This document shows, in pieces, positions 22,741-48,380 of a stretch of DNA of 64,000 nucleotides. The notes below the pieces were generated by a model, which was given only the letters and a program-made list of their open reading frames with translations, had not been told where the DNA came from and made no database searches. The stretch comes from Eukaryota sp. TZLM1-RC (Eukaryota > Protista > Metamonada: BaSk clade), in assembly GCA_040285825.1 (NCBI GenBank), contig JAUPSS010000001.1, forward strand, positions 1,736,001 through 1,800,000, in the 5' to 3' direction. The stretch's first letter is position 1, and each line of letters begins with the position of its first letter. Made by a program: the position numbers and the translations under genes.

Positions 22741-24250
22741 ACCAACAAATGCAGCTTTGGCCAAATATTTTGATGAATTTTTTTTTAATTTAATTTTAAT
22801 TTATTTTCAAAACCACAGTCTAAAAGTCAATTTCTTCAAAACAAGCTTCCACACCATCAAACCTTACAGCAGCAATGTTTTCATAATGTGCACTGACAGA
22901 CATTAAAGCTTTCGAAATCATTTTAGGAATTGATTTGAAAATAGTAAAAACAATACGATTTAGCCACAAGCGACGATCAAAACGCTTATTCATTCTTTTT
23001 TTCACAAGATTTTCAAAATCATCAATAAAATTCAAAGCAGTTTTTCCAAGACGACCATACAACGATATAGCAAATGGGCAAATTTGGTAATCTACATGGC
23101 GAACATGTTTCAATTCTTTTAAAGGATTTGCATACTTTTTCCGTTTGTACAATTCGGAGTCATCAAGGGGGATACTTCGGATTGAGCATTTTTCAAGGCA
23201 TTTTTCTTGCAAACATCCACTGTTACGACATCAACAACATTCATGACATCATCAAACGAGGGCACAACAACATCAGCACGTCGTTTTCCATATTCTGAAT
23301 CTCTTACGCTTTCATTTATATCAAGAGACCTCAACAAAGGTTCTACAAAAGATTCAATATGATAGGAATTACACATTGCATGGATTTGATCTCTGACTGC
23401 ATCATGCAACGTAGAACGATAGGAAATATATCTATTACAATTAAATAAATGTGATAATGTCAAACCAGCTCCACATTTACAAAAACAAATCATTGGGCAA
23501 ATTACAAGGCCATAAATAACAACGCATTCTCATAGCAGTGGTCCATTGGTCGTCATTCAAAAATAGACCATAAATCTGGGGAATTTGATTTATCAAAACT
23601 GCAGATGATCTGTCTTTCAAATCAATCAAAAAATTGGCAAAAGCAGGATTTTCTTTCATAGCCGTGCTAAGTCGAACAATAAAATCCTTGTTTTCAAAAT
23701 TTTTCAAAAGATGTCGTTGGAGCTTTTTCAACGCAAATTTTAATGAATATAAACTTCTGTCTGGAATTTCTTGAATGGAAATGGGGAAACATGATTGCCA
23801 TAAGTCGGGAGATAAACTGGATATTTCTTCTCTTAAGTTATCCAGGAATATGCTATTTGTATTTTCAAGAAGATTTTCGGCAAAAGGATATCTTCTAGAG
23901 AATTCAAATACAAAATTTTTTCCACCACCAACAAATGCAGCTTTGGCCAAATATTTTGATGAATTTTTTTTAATTTAATTTTAATTTATTTTAAGAGCTT
24001 TAAGTCCCGGAGTCAAAGCACCGAACAATGAAAATACAGTAGATAAACTGAAAATACTTCATCCTTATGAAGACCCTATTATGGATCAAAATTTTTACGG
24101 CACATACTGGGAAAATTATCCATTGATGCCATCAGAAGTTTTTTCGGTTATCAAAAAGAGACCTCGTGGTAAGTCTGCCGGACTTTCTGGTATTACTATT
24201 GATCATGTAAAAGCCGCGATTATTTCTTCAGAAGATTGCCTTGGTTTATT

Positions 24251-24852
24251 TTTTTTTTAAAATTAATTTTATTCTAAACCTATAAATCAACATCTAAAAA
24301 ATCCATCTCTCCCAAAACAAAAACACTAGATGCAACTCTCTCATAGTGAGATCCAAGAGAAAGCAAAGCATCAGAAACCATCTTCAACATCCCCTTAAAA
24401 ATAGAAAACACAATTCTATTTTTGCCAAAACAATCTGTTGAAATTTCTGCCAGTTCTTCTCTTTACAATCATTTCAAAATCATCCAAAAACGTAAAGCAG
24501 TTGGTGCAAGTGAACCAAAAAGGGAAAATACAAATGGATACAAATTGTATTTTGCATGCTGTAGACTGGCCAATTTGGACAAAGGTTCATTGTATTTTTT
24601 GAATTTAAAATTTTCAGCATTTGAAAGGGGATTATGAATTTCAGAATTAACAAGCCTTTCATTTGAGGCATTACAAGGATCAACAGACATTACATCCAAT
24701 AAAATAAAGCTTCCATCTAATCCAGGTAATATGACATCACCTCTATTATTCTTGTGAAAATCATTTTCAGCATCAAACAGATTTGACAACAGAGGTTCCA
24801 AGAAGGATTCAATTCTATGAGATTTACACATACAAACATACAATATTTCATA
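24251..24852 (-). mobile_element. Family A 5'-truncated copy in D (duplicate of 11049-11651)
   Basis: TSD CCTTGGTTTATT 24239-24250 / 24853-24864. Confidence 0.93.
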
Positions 24853-25704
24853 CCTTGGTTTATTGACCAGATTTTTCAACCAAATATTATCTGGTCAACG
24901 CAAGTACCCAGAAGAATTAAGAAGTTCTCGTTTGACTGCACTTGTCAAAAATTCAAAAATGGATGTTCGTCCTATTGCAGTCTCTGAGAGCTTACATAAT
25001 ATTTTTTCTGCGTGTTGCTTAAGCAGGTTCAATGAAAAAGCTAAAAAGATTTTATTACCCTTTCAATATGGTATAAATACTACAGATGGAGTCTCTTCAG
25101 CGATTTTTGCTACTGATGTCTTATTTCGTCAAAATGAATCCAATGTTTGCATGTCATTGGATTTTAGTAATGCTTTCAATTCGCTAAGTCGTCGCAGTAT
25201 CCATGGTGCTCTATTGCAATATATGCCAGAATTAATACCATATTTTCAATCAACATATTGCACATATTCTAATTTACATTTTGGTAACAACATTTTGATT
25301 TCATCAAGTGGCGTAAAAGCAAGGAGATCCGTTAGGACCTCTTTTGTTTTGTTTGGCCATTCATCCTATTCTACTGCAAATTCAAGAGATGTTTCCTTCA
25401 CTAAAAATGATTGCATATATGGATGATGTTGTGCTTATTGGTGAATTAAATATTGTGAAAAAAGCAACTGTATGTTTTAAAGAATTATTTACCAAAATTG
25501 GTCTCCGACTTAATTTACTTAAATGTGTTTTGTTATCGAATTCTCCAGTTTCCACAATAATTGATGATATTGAAATTCAAGCCAAATTATATTCAATTGA
25601 TGCTATTCGTCATTTGGGTTCGTTTTTAGGAAATAATGATGAAATTACCAAAAAATTGTTTGAAAAGTTGAACTCAATTTCTGACAAAATTGACCGAATG
25701 ATGA

Positions 25705-27286
25705 TTTTTTTTTTTTAAAATTTAATTTTATTCTAAACCTATAAATCAACATCTAAAAAAATCCATCTCTCCCAAAACAAAAACACTAGATGCAACTCTC
25801 TCATAGTGAGATCCAAGAGAAAGCAAAGCATCAGAAACCATCTTCAACATCCCCTTAAAAATAGAGGACACAATTCTATTTTGCCAAAACAATCTGTTGA
25901 AATTTCTGCCAGTTCTTCTCTTTACAATCATTTCAAAATCATCCAAAAACGTAAAGCAGTTGGTGCAAGTGAACCAAAAAGGGAAAATACAAATGGATAC
26001 AAATTGTATTTTGCATGCTGTAGACTGGCCAATTTGGACAAAGGTTCATTGTATTTTTTGAATTTAAAATTTTCAGCATTTGAAAGGGGATTATGAATTT
26101 CAGAATTAACAAGCCTTTCATTTGAGGCATTACAAGGATCAACAGACATTACATCCAATAAAATGAAGCTTCCATCTAATCCAGGTAATATGACATCACC
26201 TCTATTATTCTTATGAAAATCATTTTCAGCATCAAACAGATTTGACAACAAAGGTTCCAAGAAGGATTCAATTCTATGAGATTTACACATACAATATAAC
26301 TGGTCTCTTACAGCATCATGAACCTTGCTTCTAAAAGTAATAAAATGTTTACAATTTAACAAATGAGTAGTTGTAATTTCTCGAGAACATTTACAAATTA
26401 AATTATGAGGTAAATTGTCAGGCCAGATAAAGGAACGAAATCTCATATTCAGAGTCCAAGCAGAATCGGATAAGAGAGTACCATAAACTTGTGGAATTGT
26501 TGTTACTAAGGCAGAAGAAGTACTGTCACACATATCTTGTAAAAAGATTTGCAAAAGCGGGATTCTTTTTCTTGGCCAAGCCAAGTCTAACATCAAAATC
26601 CAAGCTTTCAAAAATCTTTGACAATTTTTGTTGAAGCTTTTTACAGCAAAACTGTAAATTAAATAGAGATCGGTTTGGAATTTCTTGAATTGATTGAGGA
26701 AAACATTTGGTCCAAATTTGTGGCGGTAATTTTTCAAGTTCACAAGATAACTCATACAAATAGGGACTACAATTGGGGACTAACAGATGAGAATCATCAG
26801 GAAATCTACGAGAAAATTCATAAATAAAATTTTTGCCACCACCCAAGAATGCTGATTGACACAAAATTGAAGATTTAGTAAAACCAATACCACCCAAATT
26901 TGCTGAAGAAAATAAATGGCTTTTCAACATTCCTGGTTCTACATCCAATAAATCAGCAAAAATTCTGTTCTCAATGAATTAAAAGAACGACAAAAGTCTA
27001 ATGCTATGGAAGGAGCACAAGATCTCAAAATGTGGGTTATTCTCCCAGTGTAGCAAATTTTAAGCATGAAAAATTTAATATGCTTTTCTATATCTAAAGA
27101 AGAAATTGAATCAAGTTCAATTTTCATTTTTTCCAAAATAACTTGCAATTCATTCTGAATTTGAGGCACATTTCCTAACCAACAACCAAGGAACTTAAAA
27201 GCATCACTACTATAATTAGTAAAAGGGACAATAGAATCGTTTATCACGAGGTCTTGAGCAGAAGAGCCAATCAGAAGGCATTTGCT
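25705..27286 (-). mobile_element. Family A 5'-truncated copy (~1.58 kb) in D
   Basis: Poly(A); TSD GAATGATGA 25696-25704 / 27287-27295. Confidence 0.93.
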
Positions 27287-28873
27287 GAATGATGAATTTA
27301 GATATAAAAAAACACATCAAATTTACCATTATAAGACTGTGTTTTAGTTCCAATTTTAATCATATATTTCGATCTACAAATCCTCTCGTCACTAGACCTT
27401 TGGCTCAAAAGTTTAATGAGTTACGTGCAAAAGTTCTGTCTCAATTACTGGGATGTAAAATGTTTCAAATTCCAGATCATGCTTACCTTAGTCCACAATA
27501 TGGTGGTTTAGGGTGGACGAAGGCTTCTATTCTTACCTCGTGTGCTTTTGTTGGTGGATGCAGAAATGCAATCTTTGAGTTCTCCGAAAGATTTGCAGAT
27601 TGGGAAGATTTATTGATGACAACGCAAAGTTCCACTGTTTTTGCATTAAATGAAGAAATTTCAAGAATTGATGTAGGAAAATGGGGTCGATGTTTTCCCC
27701 AATCATTCAATGGCAATATTCCAGAAAAAAATGTTTTAAATTTGAAGTATACTCTTCAAACATTACAGAAAAGATTGACTGGAATGTATGAAAAAGATCT
27801 TTATAATAATATTTGCAGCTCGGCTGTTTTAAATCAAGATCTTCACTCATTGTTATTGGAAAAGGGTGTTTGTGAAAACAAGGTGTCAGATTCTTCACTT
27901 TTTGTAACCATTGTACCACGAAGATTTGGATTGTGTGCTACTAATGAAGCATTTGTAACAAAAATGAGATTATATTTGAACATCCCCATTAACCAATTAT
28001 TATCAAAAGAAAAATGTATTTGTTCGAATTCACCTCAACTCACTTTGCGCCATGCTCTAAATTGCTCTAAATTGATAACTTATCGTTCTTCATTACATGA
28101 TGCTGTTAGAGACACTGTTTTCAATATGGCACAAACTGCAAGGATATCGTGTATCAAAGAGCCTCTGCTGAAAGAAACACTTTCTCTGAATAATTTTGGT
28201 TCTGATGATAGAGGTGATGTATACTGTGATTGGATTGATAATTCTGAAGCTATTGTTGACTTTGTCTCATGTAATGTTGCAAACGATACTTTGGTTCACA
28301 GAAGAAAACTTAATCCTGTGGCTGCTCTGGATTTTAAAGCAAAAGAAAAACATAGAAAATATGATAAAGAAATTGAAGATGCAAATATCGATAGAAATAC
28401 ACAGCTGGTTTTTATTGCTTTCCCATTTTCGATAAATGGAAGATTATCAGTTGAAGCAGAAACTTTTTTGGATGACTTCCAAAAAATGGTGAAAGAAAAA
28501 ACAATGAAAAGATTTTTTTTTATTTAAATTTAATTTTATTCTAAACCTATAAATCAACATCTAAAAAATCCATCTCTCCCAAAACGAAAACACTAGATGC
28601 AACTCTCTCATAGTGAGATCCAAGAGAAAGCAAAGCATCAGAAACCATCTTCAACATCCCCTTAAAAATAGAAAACACAATTCTATTTTGCCAAAACAAT
28701 CTGTTGAAATTTCTGCCAGTTCTTCTCTTTACAATCATTTCAAAATCATCCAAAAAACGTAAAGCAGTTGGTGCAAGTGAACCAAAAAGGGAAAATACAA
28801 ATGGATACAAATTGTATTTTGCATGCTGTAGACTGGCCAATTTGGACAAAGGTTCATTGTATTTTTTGAATTT

Positions 28874-29881
28874 CTGATTCACTATCTTCTTTTGGGAAAT
28901 TTTCTGAATCTTTAGCGATTAATTGTTTTGATGTAGGGGAGGCATTTTTTTTTTTTTTTTTTTTAAAATTTAATTTTATTCTAAACCTATAAATCAACAT
29001 CTAAAAAATCCATCTCTCCCAAAACAAAAACACTAGATGCAACTCTCTCATAGTGAGATCCAAGAGAAAGCAAAGCATCAGAAACCATCTTCAACATCCC
29101 CTTAAAAATAGAAAACACAATTCTATTTTGCCAAAACAATCTGTTGAAATTTCTGCCAGTTCTTCTCTTTACAATCATTTCAAAATCATCCAAAAAACGT
29201 AAAGCAGTTGGTGCAAGTGAACCAAAAAGGGAAAATACAAATGGATACAAATTGTATTTTGCATGCTGTAGACTGGCCAATTTGGACAAAGGTTCATTGT
29301 ATTTTTTGAATTTAAAATTTTCAGCATTTGAAAGGGGATTATGAATTTCAGAATTAACAAGCCTTTCATTTGAGGCATTACAAGGATCAACAGACATTAC
29401 ATCCAATAAAATGAAGCTTCCATCTAATCCAGGTAATATGACATCACCTCTATTATTCTTATGAAAATCATTTTCAGCATCAAACAGATTTGACAACAAA
29501 GGTTCCAAGAAGGATTCAATTCTATGAGATTTACACATACAATATAACTGGTCTCTTACAGCATCATGAACCTTGCTTCTAAAAGTAATAAAATGTTTAC
29601 AATTTAACAAATGAGTAGTTGTAATTTCTCGAGAACATTTACAAATTAAATTATGAGGTAAATTATCAGGCCAGATAAAGGAACGAAATCTCATATTCAG
29701 AGTCCAAGCAGAATCGGATAAGAGAGTACCATATACTTGTGGAATTGTTGTTACTAAGGCAGAAGAAGTACTGTCACACATATCTTGTAAAAGATTTGTA
29801 GGGGAGGCAGGTTTTGAGGATGTGGAGTTTTAATTGTGTATTTCATATTTGTTGTTGAATAAAAAGTTTTAGAAAAAAAAA
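28874..29881 (+). mobile_element. Family E 3' terminal fragment (~0.15 kb) split by a truncated A
   Basis: Matches 59755-59880; ends AGFEDVEF-TAA, AATAAA, poly(A); TSD ATTTTTTGAATTT 28861-28873 / 29882-29894. Confidence 0.88.
28945..29796 (-). mobile_element. Family A 5'-truncated copy (~0.85 kb) in E
   Basis: Long poly(A); TSD TGTAGGGGAGGCA 28932-28944 / 29797-29809; open 264 aa RLE ORF. Confidence 0.95.
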
Positions 29882-30886
29882 ATTTTTTGAATTTAAAATT
29901 TTCAGCATTTGAAAGGGGATTATGAATTTCAGAATTAACAAGCCTTTCATTTGAGGCATTACAAGGATCAACAGACATTACATCCAATAAAATGAAGCTT
30001 CCATCTAATCCAGGTAATATGACATCACCTCTATTATTCTTATGAAAAACATTTTCAGCATCAAACAGATTTGACAACAAAGGTTCCAAGAAGGATTCAA
30101 TTCTATGAGATTTACACATACAATATAACTGGTCTCTTACAGCATCATGAACCTTGCTTCTAAAAGTAATAAAATGTTTACAATTTAACAAATGAGTAGT
30201 TGTAATTTCTCGAGAACATTTACAAATTAAATTATGAGGTAAATTATCAGGCCAGATAAAGGAACGAAATCTCATATTCAGAGTCCAAGCTTTTTTTTTT
30301 AAAATTTAATTTTATTCTAAACCTATAAATCAACATCTAAAAAATCCATCTCTCCCAAAACAAAAACACTAGATGCAACTCTCTCATAGTGAGATCCAAG
30401 AGAAAGCAAAGCATCAGAAACCATCTTCAACATCCCCTTAAAAATAGAGAACACAATTCTATTTTGCCAAAACAATCTGTTGAAATTTCTGCCAGTTCTT
30501 CTCTTTACAATCATTTCAAAATCATCCAAAAAACGTAAAGCAGTTGGTGCAAGTGAACCAAAAAGGGAAAATACAAATGGATACAAATTGTATTTTTGCA
30601 TGCTGTAGACTGGCCAATTTGGACAAAGGTTCATTGTATTTTTTGAATTTAAAATTTTCAGCATTTGAAAGGGGATTATGAATTTCAGAATTAACAAGCC
30701 TTTCATTTGAGGCATTACAAGGATCAACAGACATTACATCCAATAAAATGAAGCTTCCATCTAATCCAGGTAATATGACATCACCTCTATTATTCTTATG
30801 AAAATCATTTTCAGCATCAAACAGATTTGACAACAAAGGTTCCAAGAAGGATTCAATTCTATGAGATTTACACATACAATATAACT

Positions 30887-31471
30887 TTTTTTTTTTTTCA
30901 ACTTTTAATTTATTTTCAGAACCACAGTCTAAAAGTCAATATCTTCAAAACAAGCTTCCACACCATCAAACCTTACAGCAGCAATGTTTTCATAATGTGC
31001 ACTGACAGACATTAAAGCTTTCGAAATCATTTTAGGAATTGATTTGAAAATAGTAAAAACAATACGATTTAGCCACAAGCGACGATCAAAACGCTTATTC
31101 ATTCTTTTTTTCACAAGATTTTCAAAATCATCAATAAAATTCAAAGCAGTTTTTCCAAGACGACCATACAACGATATAGCAAATGGGCAAATTAGGTAAT
31201 CTACATGGCGAACATGTTTCAATTCTTTTAAAGGATTTGCATACTTTTTTCGTTTGTACAATTCGGAGTCATCAAGGGGGGATACTTCGGATTGAGCATT
31301 TTTCAAGGCATTTTTCTTGCAAACATCCACTGTTACGACATCAACAACATTCATGACATCATCAAACGAGGGCACAACAACATCAGCACGTCGTTTTCCA
31401 TATTCTGAATCTCTTACGCTTTCATTTATATCAAGAGACCTCAACAAAGGTTCTACAAAAGATTCAATATG
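30887..31471 (-). mobile_element. Family B 5'-truncated copy (~0.58 kb) in A
   Basis: Poly(A); TSD ATACAATATAACT 30874-30886 / 31472-31484. Confidence 0.94.
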
Positions 31472-33037
31472 ATACAATATAACTGGTCTCTTACAGCATC
31501 ATGAACCTTGCTTCTAAAAGTAATAAAATGTTTACAATTTAACAAATGAGTAGTTGTAATTTCTCGAGAACATTTACAAATTAAATTATGAGGTAAATTA
31601 TCAGGCCAGATAAAGGAACGAAATCTCATATTCAGAGTCCAGGCAGAATCGGATAAGAGAGTACCATAAACTTGTGGAATTGTTGTTACTAAGGCAGAAG
31701 AAGTACTGTCACACATATCTTGTAAAAGATTTGCAAAAGCGGGATTCTTTTTCTTGGCCAAGCCAAGTCTAACATCAAAATCCAAGCTTTCAAAAATCTT
31801 TGACAATTTTTGTTGAAGCTTTTTACAGCAAAACTGTAAATTAAATAGAGATCGGTTTGGAATTTCTTGAATTGATTGAGGAAAACATTTGGTCCAAATT
31901 TGTGGCGGTAATTTTTCAAGTTCACAAGATAACTCATACAAATAGGGACTACAATTGGGGACTAACAGATGAGAATCATCAGGAAATCTACGAGAAAATT
32001 CATAAATAAAATTTTTGCCACCACCCAAGAATGCTGATTGACACAAAATTGAAGATTTAGTAAAACCAATACCACCCAAATTTGCTGAAGAAAATAAATG
32101 GCTTTTCAACATTCCTGGTTCTACATCCAATAAATCAGCAAAAAATTCTGTTCTCAATGAATTAAAAGAACGACAAAAATCTAATGCTATGGAAGGAGCA
32201 CAAGATCTCAAAATGTGGGTTATTCTCCCAGTGTAGCAAATTTTAAGCATGAAAAATTTAATATGCTTTTTCTATATCTAAAGAAGAAATTGAATCAAGT
32301 TCAATTTTCATTTTTTCCAAAATAACTTGCAATTCATTCTGAATTTGAGGCACATTTCCTAACCAACAACCAAGGAACTTAAAAGCATCACTACTATAAT
32401 TAGTAAAAGGGACAATAGAATCGTTTATCACGAGGTCTTGAGCAGAAGAGCCAATCAGAAGGCATTTGCTGGCATTAAGATGAAGCCCAATATTTTCATA
32501 TGAATCGGCAATTTCTTGAGCAACCAATTCTAGTAAATCAAATGAACCAATCAAGGATATATCATCCATATAAGCAACTATTTTTATAGAAGGGTATTTT
32601 TGCTTAATGATATTTAAAGTTTTGTGAATAGCTAAACAAAACAATAATGGGCCTAAAGGATCTCCCTGCTTCACTCCAGAAGATGATTTAAGACCAAATG
32701 AATTAAAAATTAAATCTGATTCTTTCCCATAAAAATGGTAGAAAAAAACTCGATAGCTCAGGAAAATCAGATTTAATAACTTCAAAAATTACTTCTCGCT
32801 TTACAGAATTAAAAGCATTTTTAAAGTCGAGATTAAAAATAAAATTATTTTCCTCTGCATTAAAAAAAAGGTATCAGAGGCAATAGCAGCAACAGAAGCA
32901 CCATCAATTGTTTTGATTCCAAATTGATGAGGATTCAAAAATGTAGAAGCTTTGTCTTTGACACGATCGAAGACAATTGATGCTAGCAAACGAGAAAGAG
33001 ATTCACCAACAGCAATTGGGCGTATTCCATCAGGTTT

Positions 33038-36000: not shown

Positions 36001-36530
36001 TAATTCAAATTCTCTTTTTTTGTTTCTCAGGGCACGTTCTCGAATTATGACCACTGATACCACAAATCGAACATTTTTAGAACCTTTTAATGGCAGTGGT
36101 TTCATTTTTTCAGTTCTTTCAATTTTGTCAATTTTTGAGTTAAAAGTAGAAATAGACTTTTGACTTTTTGCAGTTTCAGCTGGAGAAAACAAATTTCGAG
36201 AAACGGAGTTGTTAATAGAACGCGCAACAGAACGCAAGGAACGTAATGGTGGTTTTTCTGTGTTTTTTCTGGTACAATGATCAGTTTTTGAATGAAATTT
36301 TTTTTGAGATGAATTTCGAGCATAGCTTGTATTGTGGGGAGAGTGGGGAAGTGGAATGGATGAGCTTGATCTGACTGGTAGAATCTTTGCTTGGGCGTTC
36401 CAATCAGTATCAGAGTCACTATCAGCCAAAGGCATCGTTTTGACAGAGAAACAGTACGACTTTGACGCCTTGACAGAAAGTGAAATATGAAAGGGTTGAC
36501 TAAGGGAGGGAGAAAAAAAAAAAAAAAAGG
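33038..36530 (-). mobile_element. Family A full-length copy A4 (ORF 36435-33070) inserted in family A, same orientation
   Basis: 5' T16 tract, poly(A), TSD TTCCATCAGGTTT 33025-33037 / 36531-36543; 571 aa and 373 aa ORF pieces. Confidence 0.96.
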
Positions 36531-38357
36531 TTCCATCAGGTTTGATTCCGTTTCCAGGCTTTACTAAAGCAATCAGACGTGCTGCGAGTAATTCAAATGG
36601 AGGATTAATTTTCAAAACAATCAATTGTTGAAAATAGTGGGCTAGATCATCAGCAATTTCGGGAGCACTGGAACACGCTATTTTTAACAGATCAAAAGAA
36701 ATTCCAGATGGGCCTGCTGCTTTCCCCTTTGGCAATTTTTGAATAGCTTTAAGAACTTCAATTGCAGTAATAGGATTTTCAATCCAAAATGGACACACTT
36801 CAGGCTTGCTGCACTTGAAATTTTCTTGAGGATGCAACTTTTGAAGTTTTTCAAGGGTATCAGAGTTTGCATCAGCCAAAGAAGAGGAAAACAAAGACTG
36901 CTTTGCGGCACCATAACGACCACGTAAGCACAATTTACGGCAAATTTTTGATTTTACAATTTTTCTATTTCCAAATTTTTTCTTAAAACAATTTTTGTTT
37001 TTTCTAGCAAAATATTTCCAGAAGGATGAAATATTCCACTTATTATTTTTCAATTCAGAAGTAAAATTTCTCATTTCCATTGAGAAGGGGATTGTGCTGG
37101 CGGGACTTATTTCTACTGGGATCCGGATCGGGGGTCTTACGGTATCAACGGCTTTACAATTCGTACAAAACAGAAGTTTTCGACCATTTCGTGAATTTGC
37201 AACATCTTTTTTGCAAAATGGACAACAAAAATTACTGTTTTCAGAAGGGGAAGAAGAGGGAACACTAGAAGCATTTAACTGTTGATCGTCAGAAACATTA
37301 TTTTCAGCACCTTTCACAACGGCAACAGCTGGAACAGAACATTTGAGAATTTGTTGAGCAGATTTTAATTCAAATTCATTGAGAACAGAATTTTTTGCTG
37401 ATTTATTGGATGTAGAACCAGGAATGTTGAAAAGCCATTTATTTTCTTCAGCAAATTTGGGGGGTATTGGATTTACTAAATCTTCAATTTTGTGTCAATC
37501 AGCATTCTTGGGTGGTGGCAAAAATTTTATTTATGAATTTTCTCGTAGATTTCCTGATGATTCCCATCTGTTAGTCCCCAATTGTAGTCCCTATTTGTAT
37601 AAGTTATCTTGTGAACTTGAAAAATTACCGCCACAAATTTGGACCAAATGCTTTCCTCAATCAATTCAAGAAATTCCAAACCGATCTCTATTTAATTTAC
37701 AGTTTTGCTGTAAAAAGCTTCAACAAAAATTGTCAAAGATTTTTGAAAGCTTGGATTTTGATGTTAGACTTGGCTTGGCCAAGAAAAAGAATCCCGCTTT
37801 TGCAAATCTTTTACAAGATATGTGTGACAGTACTTCTTCTGCCTTAGTAACAACAATTCCGCAAGTATATGGTACTCTCTTATCCGATTCTGCTTGGACT
37901 CTGAATATGAGATTTCGTTCCTTTATCTGGCCTGATAATTTACCTCATAATTTAATTTGTAAATGTTCTCGAGAAATTACATCTACTCATTTGTTAAATT
38001 GTAAACATTTTATTACTTTTAGAAGCAAGGTTCATGATGCTGTAAGAGACCAGTTATATTGTATGTGTAAATCTCATAGAATTGAATCCTTCTTGGAACC
38101 TCTGTTGTCAAATCTGTTTGATGCTGAAAATGATTTTCATAAGAATAATAGAGGTGATGTCATATTACCTGGATTAGATGGAAGCTTTATTTTATTGGAT
38201 GTAATGTCTGTTGATCCTTGTAATGCCTCAAATGAAAGGCTTGTTAATTCTGAAATTCATAATCCCCTTTCAAATGCTGAAAATTTTAAATTCAAAAAAT
38301 ACAATGAACCTTTGTTTTTTTTTTGGTTTAATTTTAATTTATTTTCAAAACCACAGT

Positions 38358-41300
38358 CTAAAAGTCAATATCTTCAAAACAAGCTTCCACACCATCAAAC
38401 CTTACAGCAGCAATGTTTTCATAATGTGCACTGACAGACATTAAAGCTTTCGAAATCATTTTAGGAATTGATTTGAAAATAGTAAAAACAATACGATTTA
38501 GCCACAAGCGACGATCAAAACGCTTATTCATTCTTTTTTTCACAAGATTTTCAAAATCATCAATAAAATTCAAAGCAGTTTTTCCAAGACGACCATACAA
38601 CGATACAATGGGCAAATTTGGTAATCTACATGGCGAACATGCTTCAATTCTTTTAAAGGATTTGCATACTTTTTCCGTTTGTACAATTCGGAGTCATCAA
38701 GGGGGGATACTTCGGATTGAGCATTTTTCAAGGCATTTTTCTTGCATACATCCACTGTTACGACATCAACAACATTCATGACATCATCAAACGAGGGCAC
38801 AACAACATCAGCACGTCGTTTTCCATATTCTGAATCTCTTACGCTTTCATTTATATCAAGAGACCTCAACAAAGGTTCTACAAAAGATTCAATATGATAG
38901 GAATTACACATTGCATGGATTTGATCTCTGACTGCATCATGCAACGTAGAACGATAGGAAATATATCTATTACAATTAAATAAATGTGATAATGTCAAAC
39001 CAGCTCCACATTTACAAAACAAATCATTGGGCAAATTACAAGGCCATAAATAACAACGCATTCTCATAGCAGTGGTCCATTGGTCGTCATTCAAAAATAG
39101 ACCATAAATCTGGGGAATTTGATTTATCAAAACTGCAGATGAACTGTCCTTCAAATCAATCAAAAAATTGGCAAAAGCAGGATTGTTTTTTTTTCTCCCT
39201 CCCTTAGTCAACCCTTTCATTTTTCACTTTCTGTCAAGGCGTCAAAGTCGTACTGTTTCTCTGTCAAAACGATGCCTTTGGCTGATAGTGACTCTGATAC
39301 TGATTGGAACGCCCAAGCAAAGATTCTACCAGTCAGATCAAGCTCATCCACTCCACTTCCCCACTCTCCCCACAATACAAGCTATGCTCGAAATTCATCT
39401 CAAAAAAATTTTCTTTCAAAAACTGATCATTGTACCAGAAAAAACACAGAAAAACCACCATTACGTTCCTTGCGTTCTGTTGCGCGTTCTATTAACAACC
39501 CCGTTTCTCGAAATTTGTTTTCTCCAGCTGAAACTGCAAAAAGTCAAAAGTCTATTTCTACTTTTAACTCAAAAATTGATAAAATTGAAAGAACTGAAAA
39601 TATGAAACCACTGCCATTAAAAGGTTCTAAAAAGTGTTCGATTTGTGGTATCAGTGGTCATAATTCGAGAACGTGCCCTGAGAAGCAAAAAAGAGAATTT
39701 GAATTAAAATCTGCTCAACAAATTCTCAAATGTTCTGTTCCAGCTGTTGCCGTTGTGAAAGGTGCTGAAAATGATGTTTCTGACGATCAACAGTTAAATG
39801 CTTCTAGTGTTTCCTCTTCTTCCTCTTCTGAAAACAGTAATTTTTGTTGTCCATTTTGCAAAAAAGATGTTGCAGATTCACGAAATGGTCGAAAACTTCT
39901 GTTTTGTACGCATTGTGAAGCCGTTGATACCGTAAGACCCCCGATCCGGATCCCAGTAGAAATAAGTCCCGCCAGCACAATCCCCTTCTCAATGGAAATG
40001 AGAAATTTTACTTCTGAATTGAAGAATAATAAGTGGAATATTTCATCCTTCTGGAAATATTTTGCTAGAAAAAACAAAAATTGTTTTAAGAAAAAATTTG
40101 GAAATAGAAAAATTGTAAAATCAAAAATTTGCCGAAAATTGTGCTTACGTGGTCGTTATGGTGCCGCAAAGCAGTCTTTGTTTTCCTCTTCTTTGGCTGA
40201 TGTAAACTCTGATACCCTTGAAAAACTCCAAAAGTTGCATCCTCAAGAAAATTTCAAGTGCAGCAAGCCTGAAGTGTGTCCTTTTTGGATTGAAAATCCT
40301 ATTACTGCAATTGAGGTTCTTAAAGCTATTCAAAAATTACCTAAGGGGAAAGCAGCAGGCCCATCTGGAATTTCTTTTGATCTCTTAAAAATAGCGTGTT
40401 CCAGTGCTCCCGAAATTGCTGATGATCTAGCCCACTATTTTCAACAATTAATTGTTTTGAAAATAAATCCTCCATTTGAATTGCTCGCAGCACGTCTGAT
40501 TGCTTTAGTAAAGCCTGGAAACGGAATCAAACCTGATGGAATACGCCCAATTGCTGTTGGTGAATCGCTTTCTCGTTTGCTGGCATCAATTGTCTTCGAT
40601 CGTGTCAAAGACAAAGCTTCTACTTTTTTAAATCCTCATCAATTTGGAATCAAAACAATTGATGGTGCTTCTGTTGCTGCTATTGCCTCTGATACCTTTT
40701 TTAATGCAGAGGAAAATAATTTTATTTTTAATCTCGACTTTAAAAATGCTTTTAATTCTGTAAAGCGAGAAGCAATTTTTGAAGTTATTAAATCTGATTT
40801 TCCTGAGCTATCGAGTTTTTTCTACCATTTTTATGGTAAAGAATCAGATTTAATTTTTAATTCATTTGCTCTTAAATCATCTTCTGGTGTGAAGCAAGGT
40901 GACCCTTTAGGTCCATTATTGTTTTGTTTAGCTATTCACAAAACTTTAAATATCATTAAGCAAAAATACCCTTCTATAAAAATAGTTGCTTATATGGATG
41001 ATATATCCTTGATTGGTTCATTTGATTTACTAGAATTGGTCGCTCAAGAAATTGCCGATTCATATGAAAATATTGGGCTTCATCTTAATGCCAGCAAATG
41101 CCTTCTGATTGGCTCTTCTGCTCAAGACCTCGTGATAAACGATTCTATTGTCCCTTTTACTAATTATAGTAGTGATGCTTTTAAGTTCCTTGGTTGTTGG
41201 TTAGGAAATGTGCCTCAAATTCAGAATGAATTGCAAGTTATTTTGGAAAAATGAAAATTGAACTTGATTCAATTTCTTCTTTAGATATAGAAAAGCATAT

Positions 41301-44300
41301 TAAATTTTTTATGCTTAAAATTTGCTACACTGGGAGAATAACCCACATTTTGAGATCTTGTGCTCCTTCCATAGCATTAGATTTTTGTCGTTCTTTTAAT
41401 TCATTGAGAACAGAATTTTTTGCTGATTTATTGGATGTAGAACCAGGAATGTTGAAAAGCCATTTATTTTCTTCAGCAAATTTGGGGGTATTGGATTTAC
41501 TAAATCTTCAATTTTGTGTCAATCAGCATTCTTGGGTGGTGGCAAAAATTTTATTTATGAATTTTCTCGTAGATTTCCTGATGATTCCCATCTGTTAGTC
41601 CCCAATTGTAGTCCCTATTTGTATGAGTTATCTTGTGAACTTGAAAAATTACCGCCACAAATTTGGACCAAATGCTTTCCTCAATCAATTCAAGAAATTC
41701 CAAACCGATCTCTATTTAATTTACAGTTTTGCTGTAAAAAGCTTCAACAAAAATTGTCAAAGATTTTTGAAAGCTTGGATTTTGATGTTAGACTTGGCTT
41801 GGCCAAGAAAAAGAATCCCGCTTTTGCAAATCTTTTACAAGATATGTGTGACAGTACTTCTTCTGCCTTAGTAACAACAATTCCACAAGTTTATGGTACT
41901 CTCTTATCCGATTCTGCTTGGACTCTGAATATGAGATTTCGTTCCTTTATCTGGCCTGATAATTTACCTCATAATTTAATTTGTAAATGTTCTCGAGAAA
42001 TTACAACTACTCATTTGTTAAATTGTAAACATTTTATTACTTTTAGAAGCAAGGTTCATGATGCTGTAAGAGACCAGTTATATTGTATGTGTAAATCTCA
42101 TAGAATTGAATCCTTCTTGGAACCTCTGTTGTCAAATCTGTTTGATGCTGAAAATGATTTTCATAAGAATAATAGAGGTGATGTCATATTACCTGGATTA
42201 GATGGAAGCTTTATTTTATTGGATGTAATGTCTGTTGATCCTTGTAATGCCTCAAATGAAAGGCTTGTTAATTCTGAAATTCATAATCCCCTTTCAAATG
42301 CTGAAAATTTTAAATTCAAAAAATACAATGAACCTTTGTCCAAATTGGCCAGTCTACAGCATGCAAAAATACAATTTGTATCCATTTGTATTTTCCCTTT
42401 TGGTTCACTTGCACCAACTGCTTTACGTTTTTTGGATGATTTTGAAATGATTGTAAAGAGAAGAACTGGCAGAAATTTCAACAGATTGTTTTGGCAAAAT
42501 AGAATTGTGTTTTCTATTTTTAAGGGGATGTTGAAGATGGTTTCTGATGCTTTGCTTTCTCTTGGATCTCACTATGAGAGAGTTGCATCTAGTGTTTTTG
42601 TTTTGGGAGAGATGGATTTTTTTAGATGTTGATTTATAGGTTTAGAATAAAATTAATTTTTTTTAAAAAAAAAAAAAGCAGGATTTTCTTTCTTAGCCGT
42701 GCTAAGTCGAACAATAAAATCCTTGTTTTCAAAATTTTTCAAAAGATGTCGTTGGAGCTTTTTCAACGCAAATTTTAATGAATATAAACTTCTGTCTGGA
42801 ATTTCTTGAATGGATATGGGGAAACATGATTGCCATAAGTCGGGAGATAAACTGGATATTTCTTCTCTTAAGTTATCCAGGAATATGCTATTTGTATTTT
42901 CAAGAAGATTTTCGGCAAAAGGATATCTTCTAGAGAATTCAAATACAAAATTTTTTCCACCACCAATAAATGCAGCTTTGGTCAAATATTTTGATGAATT
43001 GAATCCAACACCACCAAGTTGAACATCAGAAAAAATATGATTTTTCAAAATTGATGGATCAACAGACATTAAATAAGCCAAAAATTGGGTACGTATTTTG
43101 TTAAATTGTCTACAAAAATTGTAAGTTAGGGATGGAGGTAATGATCGCAGTAAATGAGTAATTTTTCCAGCATAACAAATTTTCAAAAGAAAAAACTTAA
43201 GATGTTTTTCCAATTCAAGAGTCTTTATGACTTCTAGCTCTTTTTTAATTGAATTTAAATAATTTTCAAGGCTGTCAAGTGTCTTTTCGGCAGAACCTAA
43301 ATAGCAACCCAGAAAGCAGAAACTAGTTGAAGTATAATCAATATATGGAACTTCGAGGGAATTAATTATTAACTTAACATTTTTTCTAGAAATACAAAAA
43401 CATTTTTGAACATTCAAGTGAAGACCTATGGATTGGTATAATGTAGCAGCTTCATTAGCAACCCTATTAATTGTACTTTCTGGACCAATACAAGAAATGT
43501 CATCCATGTAAGCTACCACTTGAAGGTCAGAATTTTCTTCTTTTAATTTTTTTCAAAATTGGGTGAATTGCAAGACAAAAAAAGAAAAGGACCTAAAGGG
43601 TCTCCTTGTTTAACTCCTGATAAAGAATCCAGATTAAAAGAATTAAAAATTAAATCAGATGAATTACCATAAAACCTATAAAAAAAAGGTTTCGAGTTCA
43701 GGAAAATTTGATTTGATTTCTTTCCAAATTGAATCTCTTTTCACTGAATTGAAAGCATTTTTGAAATCAAGATTAAAAATGCAACTATTTTCGTGACAAT
43801 TGAAAAACAGATCAGATGTCAAAGCTGCAACTGAAGCTCCATCAATGGTTTTGATTCCATATTGGAATGGAGAAAAGTATTCTTTAGCTTTTGTTGAAAC
43901 TCGATTAAAAATTACTGAAGACATCAGGCGATAAATGGCTTCACCTATGGCAATTGGGCGAACTTTTCCATTAGGTTTAGTTAAAGCCACTAACCTTGAT
44001 GCACTTAATTCTTTGGGTGGAACAATTTTCATTGTCAAAACATCTTGAAAAAAGGAACATAAATCTTTAATAATAAAGGAATTTTGGCGGCACACAGATT
44101 TCAGCATATCAAAAGTAATTCCAGATGGACCTGGAGCTTTTCCAGATGGAAGACGGAAAATGGCAGTTTCAACTTCTTTTTCAGAAAGTGGATTTTGTTT
44201 CCAAAATTGTGAAGCAGATGGTTTATCCAAATTAAGAAATTCAGCTGGATGCAGATCTACTAATTGATTTACAGTTTCATCAGTCACAGGAGCAAGATCA

Positions 44301-45051
44301 GATGAGAACAGAGCGTTTTTCCCTGAACCATATCTCCCACGTAGCAAAAGTTTTCGTACAGTCTTAATCTTGGGTTGTTTCTTTGGAGTGAAAACCTTTT
44401 GGGGACGAGAACCTGATTTTTGTTCAAGGAAGAATTTCCAAATAGAAAATATATCCCATTCTCCTTTTTTCAAAGCAAGACTGAATGTTCTAAACGCAAC
44501 AGAAAAGGGAATGGAAGCCTTGGGACTGAGAACATTCGGAATCTTACATGGAGGCCGTAATGTATCAAGCGAGGAGCAAACATGGCATACATATAAATTA
44601 TTTTTTAAAATATATCTTTCAGCTTTTCATTACAAATAGCACAATTATCAATTTGACTTGCTTCAAGGGGAATATCTAACATCACTGCATCATTGTCTTC
44701 TGCAGTGCACTCATCTTTGGGAGGTAAATTAAATTCTAAATTATGTAATTCAGCGGCAGCGGCGGTTACAGAATAAGAAATAGATGGATTTTGATAATTT
44801 TCACATTTTTTAGAATTCTTTTTATGACCAACTTTATGACAGGATGAGCAACGGGGAACATTTTTTGAGAGTTTAGTGTTTTTTGCGGCACGCTGATCAT
44901 TTTTTGAATTGAAAATTTTTTGAGAAGAATTTCGAGCATAGCTTGGAGGGTGGGGAGAGTGGAGGAGTGAAGGGGATGAGCTTGATCTGTCAGGTAGAAC
45001 CTTTACTTGGGCATTCCAATCAGTATCGGAGTCACTATCAGTCTCTGGCAT
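38358..45051 (-). CDS. Family B RT-RLE polyprotein (~1060 aa reconstructed; interrupted by A5)
   Basis: MPETDSDSD start; CSSCHKVGHKKNSKKC; CAIC..CHVC; GPSG, RPIAIGE, DFKNAF, QGDPLGP, YMDD, FLG, LGGVG, CKC..HLFNC, RSTLHD, RRAD..DV..KRKKY; ends ACFEDIDF. Confidence 0.87.
39185..42673 (+). mobile_element. Family A full-length copy A5 (innermost element of the nest)
   Basis: 5' G-T9 tract, poly(A), TSD AAAAGCAGGATT 39173-39184 / 42674-42685. Confidence 0.96.
39272..42639 (+). CDS. Family A RT-RLE polyprotein (~1122 aa)
   Basis: 660 aa continuous ORF 39272-41254; remaining breaks are single-base homopolymer indels. Confidence 0.92.
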
Positions 45052-48000
45052 CGTTTTGGGAGAGACACAGTACAACTTTGACGCCAACACAGAAAGTGAA
45101 AAATGAGAGGCTTGACCAAAAGAGGGAGAAAAAAAAATGAATGAACCTTTGTCCAAATTGGCCAGTCTACAGCATGCAAAATACAATTTGTATCCATTTG
45201 TATTTTCCCTTTTTGGTTCACTTGCACCAACTGCTTTACGTTTTTTGGATGATTTTGAAATGATTGTAAAGAGAAGTACTGGCAGAAATTTCAACAGATT
45301 GTTTTGGCAAAATAGAATTGTGTTTTCTATTTTTAAGGGGATGTTGATGATGGTTTCTGATGCTTTGCTTTCTCTTGGATCTCACTATGAGAGAGTTGCA
45401 TCTAGTGTTTTTGTTTTGGGAGAGATGGATTTTTTAGATGTTGATTTATAGGTTTAGAATAAAATTAATTTTTTTTAAAAAAAAAAAGATTTTAATTCAA
45501 ATTCTCTTTTTTGTTTCTCAGGGCACGTTCTCGAATTATGACCACTGATACCACAAATCGAACATTTTTTAGAACCTTTTAATGGCAGTGGTTTCATTTT
45601 TTCAGTTCTTTCAATTTTGTCAATTTTTGAGTTAAAAGTAGAAATAGACTTTTGACTTTTTGCAGTTTCAGCTGGAGAAAACAAATTTCGAGAAACGGAG
45701 TTGTTAATAGAACGCGCAACAGAACGCAAGGAACGTAATGGTGGTTTTTCTGTGTTTTTTCTGGTACAATGATCAGTTTTTGAATGAGAATTTTTTTGAG
45801 ATGAATTTCGAGCATAGCCTGTATTGTGGGGAGAGTGGGGAAGTGGAGTGGATGAGCTTGATCTGACTGGTAGAATCTTTGCTTGGGCGTTCCAATCAGT
45901 ATCAGAGTCACTATCAGCCAAAGGCATCGTTTTGACAGAGAAACAGTACGACTTTAGAAACAGTAGTCCAAGCAGAATCGGATAAGAGAGTACCATAAAC
46001 TTGTGGAATTGTTGTTACTAAGGCAGAAGAAGTACTGTCACACATATCTTGTAAAAGATTTGCAAAAGCGGGATTCTTTTTCTTGGCCAAGCCAAGTCTA
46101 ACATCAAAATCCAAGCTTTCAAAAATCTTTGACAATTTTTGTTGAAGCTTTTTACAGCAAAACTGTAAATTAAATAGAGATCGGTTTGGAATTTCTTGAA
46201 TTGATTGAGGAAAACATTTGGTCCAAATTTGTGGCGGTAATTTTTCAAGTTCACAAGATAACTCATACAAATAGGGACTACAATTGGGGACTAACAGATG
46301 AGAATCATTAGGAAATCTACGAGAAAATTCATAAATAAAATTTTTGCCACCACCCAAGAATGCTGATTGACACAAAATTGAAGATTTAGTAAAACCAATA
46401 CCACCCAAATTTGCTGAAGAAAATAAATGGCTTTTCAACATTCCTGGTTCTACATCCAATAAATCAGCAAAAATTCTGTTCTCAATGAATTAAAAGAACG
46501 ACAAAAATCTAATGCTATGGAAGGAGCACAAGATCTCAAAATGTGGGTTATTCTCCCAGTGTAGCAAATTTTAAGCATGAAAAATTTAATATGCTTTTCT
46601 ATATCTAAAGAAGAAATTGAATCAAGTTCAATTTTCATTTTTTCCAAAATAACTTGCAATTCATTCTGAATTTGAGGCACATTTCCTAACCAACAACCAA
46701 GGAACTTAAAAGCATCACTACTATAATTAGTAAAAGGGACAATAGAATCGTTTATCACGAGGTCTTGAGCAGAAGAGCCAATCAGAAGGCATTTGCTGGC
46801 ATTAAGATGAAGCCCAATATTTTCATATGAATCGGCAATTTCTTGAGCAACCAATTCTAGTAAATCAAATGAACCAATCAAGGATATATCATCCATATAA
46901 GCAACTATTTTTATAGAAGGGTATTTTTGCTTAATGATATTTAAAGTTTTGTGAATAGCTAAACAAAACAATAATGGGCCTAAAGGATCTCCCTGCTTCA
47001 CTCCAGAAGATGATTTAAGACCAAATGAATTAAAAATTAAATCTGATTCTTTCCCATAAAAATGGTAGAAAAAACTCGATAGCTCAGGAAAATCAGATTT
47101 AATAACTTCAAAAATTGCTTCTCGCTTTACAGAATTAAAAGCATTCTTAAAGTCGAGATTAAAAATAAAATTATTTTCCTCTGCATTGAAAAAGGTATCA
47201 GAGGCAATAGCAGCAACAGAAGCACCATCAATTGTTTTGATTCCAAATTGATGAGGATTCAAAAATGTAGAAGCTTTGTCTTTGACACGATCGAAGACAA
47301 TTGATGCTAGCAAACGAGAAAGAGATTCACCAACAGCAATTGGGCGTATTCCATCAGGTTTGATTCCGTTTCCAGGCTTTACTAAAGCAATCAGACGTGC
47401 TGCGAGTAATTCAAATGGAGGATTAATTTTCAAAACAATTAATTGTTGAAAATAGTGGGCTAGATCATCAGCAATTTCGGGAGCACTGGAACATGCTATT
47501 TTTAAGAGATCAAAAGAAATTCCAGATGGGCCTGCTGCTTTCCCCTTTGGCAATTTTTGAATAGCTTAGAACTTCAAATCAAAATGAAAAGATTTGATAT
47601 TTTTTTATGGCGTTCACGGATTCAATTTGCCATTATTAATAGATTACCGCGGTTTTTCAATCGAATTAGAGAAGCTTTAGCTAGACAGCAAGCAAATCAA
47701 GATTTTGTAGAGGAAATCTTGGTTTAATGATAGTCATCCCATTAGTTATGATTTAATTTAATCAAGTGTGCAAATTCAATAAATTAATATATTTATTTTC
47801 AAAACCACAGTCTAAAAGTCAATTTCTTCAAAACAAGCTTCCACACCATCAAACCTTACAGCAGCAATGTTTTCATAATGTGCACTGACAGACATTAAAG
47901 CTTTCGAAATCATTTTAGGAATTGATTTGAAAATAGTAAAAACAATACGATTTAGCCACAAGCGACGATCAAAACGCTTATTCATTCTTTTTTTCACAAG

Positions 48001-48380
48001 ATTTTCAAAATCATCAATAAAATTCAAAGCAGTTTTTCCAAGACGACCATACAACGATATAGCAAATGGGCAAATTTGGTAATCTACATGGCGAACATGT
48101 TTCAATTCTTTTAAAGGATTTGCATACTTTTTCCGTTTGTACAATTCGGAGTCATCAAGGGGGGATACTTCGGATTGAGCATTTTTCAAGGCATTTTTCT
48201 TGCAAACATCCACTGTTACGACATCAACAACATTCATGACATCATCAAACGAGGGCACAACAACATCAGCACGTCGTTTTCCATATTCTGAATCTCTTAC
48301 GCTTTCATTTATATCAAGAGACCTCAACAAAGGTTCTACAAAAGATTCAATAGAAGTCATAAAGACTCTTGAATTGGAAA

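What the first reader, a model, noticed from the sequence alone, without database searches (positions are those of the whole stretch)
23966..48352. Seven-level Russian-doll nest with every TSD still readable
Seen: B(-) 23966-48352 contains D(+) 23993-47790 (TSD ATTTATTTT), then A(-) 28516-47582 (AATGAAAAGATTT), A(-) 30291-45964 (AGTCCAAGC), A(+) 37373-45486 (AGATTTTAATTCA), full-length B(-) 38316-45139 (AATGAACCTTTGT) and full-length A5(+) 39185-42673 (AAAAGCAGGATT). Side branches add six more insertions (24251, 25705, E 28874 containing A 28945, 30887, 33038). A 0.6 kb element grew to 24 kb through 12 insertions with little divergence between outer and inner A copies. Inference: a very high local insertion rate, families active at the same time, and growth from the inside out as in centromeric retrotransposon arrays. 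The outermost 9 bp AT-rich TSD is the weakest link.
Basis: seen in the sequence. Interest (0 to 1): 0.82.

Follow-up and report, generated by a model that had tools for sequence, protein, structure and literature searches.

The report
Seven-deep nest of young LINE retrotransposons
This 24-kb stretch of the protist Skoliomonas litria really is thirteen jumping-gene copies inserted one inside another, seven levels deep, but it is an ordinary part of a larger jumping-gene-only island, and nothing here marks it as a centromere.

Summary
Observation confirmed almost to the base. Window 23966-48352 (24,387 bp) parses into 13 copies of four related LINE families (A x8, B x3, D, E) plus 12 perfect target-site duplications (TSDs) of 8-13 bp, with no base left over. 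Removing each insert and one TSD restores every host. Ten sites are checked against independent copies and two by an unbroken reading frame. Only the outermost 580-bp B fragment has no TSD.

The elements are R2-type non-LTR retrotransposons with a reverse transcriptase and a C-terminal restriction-like endonuclease, and they show no strict target site. The genome is S. litria TZLM1-RC, inside a 4.04-Mb contig.

- A, B, D and E were active over the same period, as the nesting order shows.
- All insertions are very young.
- Depth seven needs no special inside-out process: random hits on a growing patch reach it 12% of the time.
- 98.8% of the whole 64-kb window is LINE sequence.
- Earlier follow-ups in this scan found several such islands, so the centromere analogy has no support.
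- Divergence shows no trend with depth.

The nest's left 3.3 kb also lies in a near-identical 10.6-kb duplication. Public short-read contigs could not test the long-range order.

The parts
23966..48352 (-). Level 1: outer family-B 3' fragment, 580 bp after de-nesting (23966-23992 plus 47800-48352). No TSD of its own.
   Evidence: The restored sequence aligns end to end with uninterrupted B copies, for example 22781-23359 at 99.8%. No flank repeat was found.
23993..47790 (+). Level 2: family D, a 5'-truncated LINE of 2,513 bp after de-nesting (23993-24250, 24865-25704, 27296-28515, 47596-47790). TSD ATTTATTTT. Its 3' end has no poly(A).
   Evidence: The restored D has a continuous RT/RLE reading frame across the 24251, 25705 and 28516 sites. 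D 1852-2511 is contiguous with the separate D copy at 60458-61117.
24251..24852 (-). Side insertion in D: family A 3' fragment of about 0.6 kb, with 17 extra bases at the 5' junction. TSD CCTTGGTTTATT.
   Evidence: It is also present in the duplicated copy at 11049-11651.
25705..27287 (-). Side insertion in D: family A, 1,583 bp (A 1908-3489). TSD AATGATGA, the shortest of the twelve.
   Evidence: The D reading frame runs unbroken across the site.
28516..47582 (-). Level 3: family A, 2,363 bp after de-nesting (A about 1127-3489). TSD AATGAAAAGATTT.
   Evidence: Single HSP of 99.15% to the independent A at 6968-10458. An empty site is seen in the D copy at 60458-61117.
28874..29881 (+). Side insertion in the level-3 A: family E 3' fragment, 143 bp after de-nesting, poly(A)-ended. 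TSD ATTTTTTGAATTT.
   Evidence: E 1-127 is 100% identical to 59755-59881 and contiguous across the inner insertion site.
28945..29798 (-). Family A, 854 bp, inside E. TSD TAGGGGAGGCA.
30291..45964 (-). Level 4: family A, nearly full length, 3,443 bp after de-nesting. TSD AGTCCAAGC.
   Evidence: Single HSP of 99.68% to the A at 6968-10458 across three excised sites.
30887..31471 (-). Side insertion in the level-4 A: family B 3' fragment of 585 bp. TSD ATACAATATAACT.
   Evidence: It is 97.6% identical to B 2743-3322.
33038..36530 (-). Side insertion in the level-4 A: full-length family A, 3,493 bp. TSD TTCCATCAGGTTT.
37373..45486 (+). Level 5: family A, 1,277 bp after de-nesting (A 2214-3489). 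TSD AGATTTTAATTCA.
   Evidence: Single HSP of 98.4% to an independent A.
38316..45139 (-). Level 6: full-length family B, 3,323 bp after de-nesting. TSD AATGAACCTTTGT.
   Evidence: The restored B is contiguous with B copies at 53157-54453 and 54438-55673 across the excised site.
39185..42673 (+). Level 7: full-length family A, 3,489 bp. TSD AAAAGCAGGATT. The RT ORF is broken by one or two frameshifts.
16730..27287 (.). Copy 2 of a 10.6-kb near-identical duplication. Copy 1 is 1-6954 plus 10472-14086. It includes the nest's left 3.3 kb.
   Evidence: One HSP of 10,569 bp with 11 mismatches. Only 3 mismatches fall before 25705 and 8 fall inside the A at 25705, so the breakpoint lies within that A's first roughly 160 bp.

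Best explanation
The interval is a real nest made by 12 successive target-primed reverse-transcription insertions of four related non-LTR retrotransposon families into a 0.58-kb fragment of family B.

Each element encodes one protein with a zinc knuckle, a reverse transcriptase and a C-terminal restriction-like endonuclease (R2 type). Inferred mechanism: the endonuclease nicks one strand, the freed 3' end primes copying of the element RNA from its poly(A) end, and the second strand is cut usually 13 bp away. That gives the 8-13-bp duplications. Frequent early stops give the 5'-truncated copies.

There is no strict target sequence. The nest sits in a gene-free island of at least 64 kb made only of such elements, so almost every new hit lands in an older element. 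Depth seven follows from random hits on a growing patch.

Shown here: the parse, the TSDs, the restoration of hosts, the domain content and the order of events. Inferred: the TPRT steps, and that clustering reflects tolerated insertions in a safe island plus some local hot spots rather than a centromere-specific process.
For: - 12 of 12 inner insertions have exact TSDs, against a 0.4% chance rate per pair.
- The interval is fully accounted for by 13 elements plus 139 bp of TSD.
- Every host is restored to one contiguous alignment or an unbroken ORF.
- Inserts end in poly(A) and are variably 5'-truncated.
- RVT_1 domain at E 1.7e-23. A profile of the C-terminal domain hits the R2Bm RLE region 933-1043 at E 4.7e-6, with the CCHC, R-x-D, D and K-x-x-K-Y motifs conserved. 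No other endonuclease family appears in the Pfam scans at E up to 1.
- 98.8% of the window is LINE by blastx.
- The random-insertion simulation gives P(depth >= 7) = 0.12.
- TSD pairs up to 23.8 kb apart match and restore their hosts. A misassembly that switched between repeat copies would not give that.
Against: - Long-range order rests on one Nanopore R9.4 assembly (PMC11316075). Public short-read contigs collapse the repeats and break at the element boundaries, so they neither support nor refute it.
- The nest's left edge lies in a near-identical 10.6-kb duplication, which could be a very recent event or an assembly problem.
- The outermost B has no TSD.
- Two inner pairs (A in B at 38316-45139, A in E at 28874-29881) could have arrived as ready-made composites.
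Confidence: 0.85

Rival explanations
1. Targeted growth: the elements home to this domain, a centromere-like or chromatin-marked landing zone, or to each other's sequence. The nest would then reflect a raised local insertion rate.
For: Independent insertions recur at the same short stretches of host elements.
- Three fall within about 40 bp of family B: A at 39185, A at 6955 and D at 60459, each with a different TSD.
- Two fall within about 30 bp of family A: E at 28874 and B at 38316.
- Seven of 13 pre-insertion sites have C before the TSD, and 10 of 13 TSDs start with A.
- The island is internal to a 4.04-Mb contig, near 1.74-1.80 Mb.
Against: - No common target sequence is seen.
- Depth is within random expectation.
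- Orientation of insert relative to host is 9 antisense to 3 sense, two-sided binomial p = 0.15 (my count).
- Earlier follow-ups in this scan report several such islands on one contig and copies next to ordinary genes (not re-tested here).
- There are no centromere markers that could be tested.
Confidence: 0.12
2. Fewer local events than 12: some inner pairs were retrotransposed as composites from a source element that already carried the inner insert. Candidates are B 38316-45139 with A 39185-42673 inside, and E with A 28945 inside.
For: A composite transcript would give the same structure, with the inner TSD copied along. Nothing in the window excludes this.
Against: - The similar A-in-B arrangement at 6063-10763 has a different TSD, AGCCGTGCTAAGT against AAAAGCAGGATT, so it is an independent hit and not a sister composite.
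- The other E copy at 59755-59881 is empty at the site.
- It would need a 6.8-kb full-length cDNA.
Confidence: 0.08
3. Assembly artefact: the nest, or its order, comes from misjoining 98-99% identical repeats in a Nanopore assembly.
For: - Repeats of up to 3.5 kb are 98-99.7% identical.
- The two copies of the 10.6-kb duplication differ by 53 gap positions in 39 gap openings, most of them single-base, against 11 substitutions. That suggests residual long-read error.
- The duplication itself could be a false duplication.
Against: A misjoin inside a repeat would unpair the TSDs and break host continuity. All 12 pairs match, and all hosts restore without gain or loss of a base.
Confidence: 0.04

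Closest known systems
Nested retrotransposon clusters, such as the maize intergenic LTR-retrotransposon nests and Drosophila heterochromatic or centromeric TE islands (from general knowledge)
   Same: Younger elements sit inside older ones. Each insert is flanked by its own TSD, and the order can be read by de-nesting. The region is gene-free and built only of retroelements.
   Different: Here the elements are non-LTR, so age cannot be read from LTR pairs. All copies are very young (0-2% apart). The host is a small 32-Mb protist genome. There is no evidence of centromere function.
R2-type restriction-like-endonuclease (RLE) LINEs: the R2, R4, NeSL, CRE and HERO group
   Same: A single ORF with N-terminal zinc-binding motifs, an RT, and a C-terminal CCHC plus PD-(D/E)XK endonuclease. 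The RLE profile matches R2Bm residues 933-1043, and the RT matches R2 and L1 ORF2 structures.
   Different: Most RLE LINEs are site-specific (rDNA, spliced-leader genes, microsatellites). These insert at many different sequences with 8-13-bp TSDs. The clade within the group was not resolved here.
Giardia GilM/GilT (Genie) elements, the LINEs of the nearest well-studied metamonad relatives (from general knowledge)
   Same: Poly(A)-ended RLE-type LINEs in a metamonad. They are known for head-to-tail arrays, and B 3' fragments here also lie head to tail (17851-23992 and 53157-58965).
   Different: No Giardia protein appeared among the 101 hits at E <= 0.001. The nearest relatives outside Skoliomonas are unnamed metagenomic proteins at 35% identity or less. 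The nest is internal to a 4-Mb contig, not at a contig end.

Membership tests
Non-LTR retrotransposon (LINE) inserted by target-primed reverse transcription | Reverse transcriptase of the non-LTR class | tested here: met
   Pfam RVT_1 at E 1.7e-23. The best solved relatives are R2 and LINE-1 ORF2 RTs, at E 7.5e-9 to 9e-8.
Non-LTR retrotransposon (LINE) inserted by target-primed reverse transcription | 3' poly(A) or A-rich tail, variable 5' truncation, no terminal repeats, flanking TSDs | tested here: met
   A, B and E copies end in A runs of 6-20 bases (most 8 or more), while family D has no poly(A) tail (3' end AATAAATTAATAT). The 5' ends fall at A 1, 2, 51, 1124, 1908, 2214, 2643 and 2882 and at B 1 and 2743. 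TSDs are 8-13 bp.
RLE-bearing (R2-type) LINE | C-terminal CCHC motif followed by a PD-(D/E)XK restriction-like endonuclease | tested here: met
   In the alignment of 10 relatives, H133, C137, H148, E169 and D189 are invariant, and R187, D203, K233 and Y237 nearly so. The profile hits the R2Bm RLE region 933-1043 at E 4.7e-6. A single-sequence fold of this domain was too poor to use (pLDDT 35).
RLE-bearing (R2-type) LINE | No N-terminal AP-type endonuclease | tested here: met
   No Exo_endo_phos or other endonuclease family appears in Pfam scans of the 1,099-aa ORF at E up to 1.
Site-specific RLE clades (R2, CRE/SLACS, NeSL, R4, Utopia) | Insertion at one conserved target sequence | tested here: not met
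   Thirteen pre-insertion sites share no sequence beyond a weak C|A at the first nick.
Site-specific RLE clades (R2, CRE/SLACS, NeSL, R4, Utopia) | Placement inside the clade in an RT phylogeny | not tested
Earlier notes call the elements 'CRE-like', and that was not checked here.
Nested transposon cluster | Each insert has its own TSD, and excision of the insert plus one TSD restores a contiguous host | tested here: met
   Twelve of 12.
Centromeric retrotransposon array | One such domain per chromosome, bound by centromeric histone | not testable with these tools
   No chromatin data were available. Earlier follow-ups report more than one island per contig, which argues against it. That was not re-tested here.

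The most novel reading that the evidence does not exclude
The RLE LINEs of Skoliomonas preferentially hit short hot spots inside each other's sequence. They would then build and maintain their own gene-free chromosomal domains, and one domain per chromosome could serve as the centromere.
Probability: 0.1. Interest if true: 0.6.

Novelty: new member of a known kind. Interest (0 to 1): 0.3.

Why it matters
This is a clean example of a nest of transposable elements (TEs). All 24,387 bases are explained by 13 elements and 12 duplications, so it gives an exact relative chronology for four retrotransposon families in a little-studied free-living metamonad.

The S. litria genome paper does not mention retrotransposons: the word stem 'retrotranspos' does not occur in its text (PMC11316075).

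The nest shows that non-site-specific R2-type LINEs were active very recently and at overlapping times in this lineage. It also gives a small set of reconstructed empty sites for studying how such endonucleases choose targets.

It does not bear on any long-standing open question. The scan has already found and followed up equivalent nests elsewhere in this genome.

Tried and rejected
- Public reads: four runs from one study, kept only as short-read contigs. Laid on 42400-48399 (6,000 letters), the contigs collapse onto uninterrupted A or B copies and end at the element boundaries (42684, 45140, 45457/45498, 45965, 47567/47583, 48352). They could not test the order of the nest.
- Divergence against depth: private substitutions are 0.25%, 0.17%, 0.47% and 0.46% for A copies at depths 3, 4, 5 and 7. 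There is no decline inward. Differences follow three A sublineages, so they cannot be used as a clock.
- Single-sequence structure prediction of the C-terminal domain: pLDDT 35, unusable. It was replaced by a profile search against solved structures.
- Protein atlas look-up: only unnamed RVT_1 clusters, no help with the clade.
- TSD for the outermost B: none at any nearby offset. Its 5' end is followed by 32-34 bp of B 1904-1937 in the opposite orientation and then a fragment of a more distant family. Its 3' end abuts another B fragment.
- Microhomology at 5' junctions: 0-3 bp, with extra bases at some junctions and no consistent pattern.
- The idea that the A-in-B pair at 38316-45139 is a copy of the A-in-B pair at 6063-10763 was rejected because the TSDs differ.
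- One script timed out and one returned no answer. The test was rerun at a smaller size.
Full report
**What the window is.** The window has about 33% G+C throughout and is highly repetitive: a self-comparison gives 1,187 local matches, most at 97-100% identity. Translated pieces of the main repeat match annotated proteins of 'Eukaryota sp. TZLM1-RC' at up to 100% identity. That strain is Skoliomonas litria, a free-living anaerobic metamonad. Its 31.9-Mb genome was assembled from Nanopore R9.4 reads (41x) and polished with Illumina reads (PMC11316075). One protein with a 360-residue stretch identical to window 46453-47532 places the window on contig JAUPSS010000001.1 (4,041,680 bp) at about 1,736,001-1,800,000, well inside the contig. 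A blastx search against the LINE proteins found covers 98.8% of the 64 kb. The only two gaps over 150 bp are about 200 bp each.

**The elements.**
- Family A is 3.49 kb and family B is 3.32 kb.
- A carries a Pfam RVT_1 domain at E 1.7e-23. An intact relative elsewhere in the genome (P0004, 1,099 aa) has a CCHC zinc knuckle, a second Cys-rich motif, the RT and a long C-terminal region.
- The RT is closest to the RTs of solved R2 and LINE-1 ORF2 proteins.
- An alignment of the C-terminal region from ten relatives conserves a C..C..H..C motif, RH..VRD, E, R-x-D, D and K..KY. Its profile hits Bombyx R2 residues 933-1043, the restriction-like endonuclease, at E 4.7e-6.
- No AP-type endonuclease is detected.
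- These are RLE-type (R2-type) non-LTR retrotransposons.
- Family D, read after de-nesting, has the same layout. Family E is seen here only as a 143-bp 3' end.
- Copies end in poly(A), except family D, which ends AATAAATTAAT(A/T)T in both of its copies. Copies are 5'-truncated at many different points.

**Check of the observation.** All twelve inner insertions have a perfect TSD. The lengths are 9, 12, 8, 13, 13, 11, 9, 13, 13, 13, 13 and 12 bp, 139 bp in all, and 13 is the commonest. In a control with random position pairs from the same window, allowing 3 bp of slack at either end, a repeat of 8 bp or more turns up in 0.4% of pairs.

I then excised each insert with one TSD, innermost first. 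The restored lengths are:
- B 580
- D 2,513
- A 602, 1,583, 2,363, 854, 3,443, 3,493, 1,277 and 3,489
- E 143
- B 585 and 3,323

Together with the 139 bp of TSD they add up to 24,387 bp, exactly 23966-48352. No base is unexplained.

**Restoration of each host.**
- The level-3, level-4 and level-5 A hosts each align as a single HSP to the independent A at 6968-10458, at 99.15%, 99.68% and 98.4%.
- The level-6 B is contiguous with B copies at 53157-55673 across the excised site.
- The outer B is contiguous with 22781-23359 at 99.8%.
- E is identical to 59755-59881 across its site.
- D is contiguous with the separate D copy at 60458-61117 across the level-3 insertion site.
- D keeps one unbroken reading frame, aligned to LINE proteins, across the two other sites.

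Two small corrections apply. The A at 24251 ends at 24852 because it has 17 extra bases at its 5' junction. The outermost B has no TSD. Its poly(T) end abuts the 5' end of another B(-) fragment (22778-23965). Its 5' end is followed by a 32-34-bp inverted piece of B and then a fragment of a more distant family.

**Is it an assembly artefact?** I could not test this with reads. The only public runs are kept as short-read contigs, which collapse onto uninterrupted copies and stop at the element boundaries.

The sequence itself argues against a misjoin. A false switch between near-identical copies would unpair TSDs and leave hosts with missing or extra bases. Instead, junction partners up to 23.8 kb apart match and restore their hosts exactly.

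The assembly does carry long-read noise. The two copies of a 10.6-kb duplication differ by 53 gap positions (39 gap openings, most of them single-base) but only 11 substitutions. The frameshifts that break every A copy at different places therefore cannot be taken as proof that the copies are dead.

**Order and age.**
- Nesting gives the order directly. B was active before D and before the first A, and again after three A insertions. A was active before and after that B. E falls between two A events. Overlapping activity of the families is a sound inference.
- All copies are young. A copies differ by 0-2% in substitutions, and no TSD pair has a mismatch.
- Divergence does not fall with depth. 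Private substitutions are 0.25%, 0.17%, 0.47% and 0.46% at depths 3, 4, 5 and 7.
- The pairwise table shows three A sublineages. Levels 3 and 4 group with the copies at 6968 and 61797. Levels 5 and 7 group with each other. The side copies at 33038 and 28945 group with the copies at 1263, 17991 and 49676. Differences therefore record the source lineage, not time since insertion.

**Does depth seven need a special process?** I simulated 12 elements of the observed lengths landing, in random order, at uniformly random positions on the growing composite. The deepest level is 5 or 6 in 74% of runs and 7 or more in 12%. The observed depth is within what random hits give. Orientation of insert relative to host is 9 antisense to 3 sense, two-sided binomial p = 0.15, so there is no clear bias.

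Clustering itself is real. Twelve hits in 24 kb could not be a genome-wide uniform rate in a 32-Mb genome. But a raised insertion rate cannot be told apart from survival of insertions in a gene-free island.

**Hints of local target preference.**
- Three independent insertions, with different TSDs, fall within about 40 bp of family B: the A at 39185, the A at 6955 and the D at 60459.
- Two fall within about 30 bp of family A: E at 28874 and B at 38316.
- A weak C|A is seen at the first nick.

**Surroundings.** The nest's left 3.3 kb belongs to a 10.6-kb segment (16730-27287) that recurs at 1-14086, once the A at 6955-10458 is removed. That A has its own TSD and an empty site in the other copy, so it inserted after the duplication. 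Only three substitutions separate the first 9 kb of the two copies. Eight lie inside the A at 25705, and the upstream copy's A runs on past the truncation point of the nest's copy. The duplication breakpoint therefore lies in the first roughly 160 bp of that A. This fits unequal recombination between two A copies, or a false duplication in the assembly. It does not change the count of 12 insertion events, because the nest's copy keeps both junctions of each.

**Comparison with what is known.** Nested retrotransposon clusters are a long-known feature of repeat-rich regions. RLE LINEs without strict site specificity are also known, though most clades of that group are site-specific. What is new is the organism: the genome paper does not mention retrotransposons. 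Earlier follow-ups in this scan examined other 64-kb windows of the same genome. They reached the same reading, gene-free nests of RLE LINEs with several per contig and no sign of a centromere. Notes on neighbouring windows indicate that this island extends past both edges of my window. I did not re-test those statements.

**Verdict.** The mechanism is ordinary TPRT of young, co-active RLE LINEs inside a LINE-only island. The 'inside-out' and centromere readings are not needed to explain it. Interest is modest.

Noticed in passing
1-14086 and 16730-27287: A 10.6-kb near-identical duplication. There are 3 substitutions in the first 9 kb and many 1-bp indels. Its right breakpoint lies inside the 3' 160 bp of an A element. 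One copy has since received a full-length A (6955-10458, TSD AGCCGTGCTAAGT). It is either very recent unequal recombination between A copies or a false duplication in the assembly.
   Followed up: partly
B coordinates 2423-2457: window 39173-39184, 6942-6954, 60445-60456: Three independent insertions (two A, one D) with different TSDs fall within about 40 bp of family B. Likewise E (28874) and B (38316) hit two different A copies only 2 bp apart in A coordinates. These are possible target hot spots inside the elements themselves.
   Followed up: partly
24836-24852, 31465-31471, 48345-48352: Three independent copies (A at 24251, B at 30887, the outer B) are 5'-truncated within about 25 nt of the same homologous position, roughly 0.58-0.60 kb from the 3' end, in the codons for ..QLYCMCKSH(R)IESF... 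The B at 30887 is also inserted at that very place in its host A. This could be a pause site, an RNA end or chance. It was seen post hoc on few events.
   Followed up: no
48351-48738: The 5' end of the outer B is followed by 32-34 bp identical to B 1904-1937 in the opposite orientation. After that comes a 358-bp fragment of a more distant family (about 69% identical to B) that lies colinear with B. It looks like a twin-priming or template-switch junction.
   Followed up: partly
17851-23992 and 53157-58965: B 3' fragments lie head to tail. Two neighbours share the same 5' end at B 2140, and a 39-bp piece of that end recurs at 22741-22779 and 6026-6064. This suggests tandem duplication of LINE 3' ends rather than separate insertions.
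   Followed up: no
All six full-length A copies: 1263, 6968, 17991, 33036, 39185, 49676: Every copy has its ORF broken by frameshifts at different places, although the copies differ by about 1.5% or less in substitutions. Given the indel-rich noise between the two duplicate segments, many of these frameshifts may be uncorrected Nanopore errors in repeats rather than real decay.
   Followed up: partly
47778-47790 and 60459-60471: Family D has no poly(A) tail. Both copies end ...AATAAATTAAT(A/T)T directly before the TSD, unlike families A, B and E.
   Followed up: no
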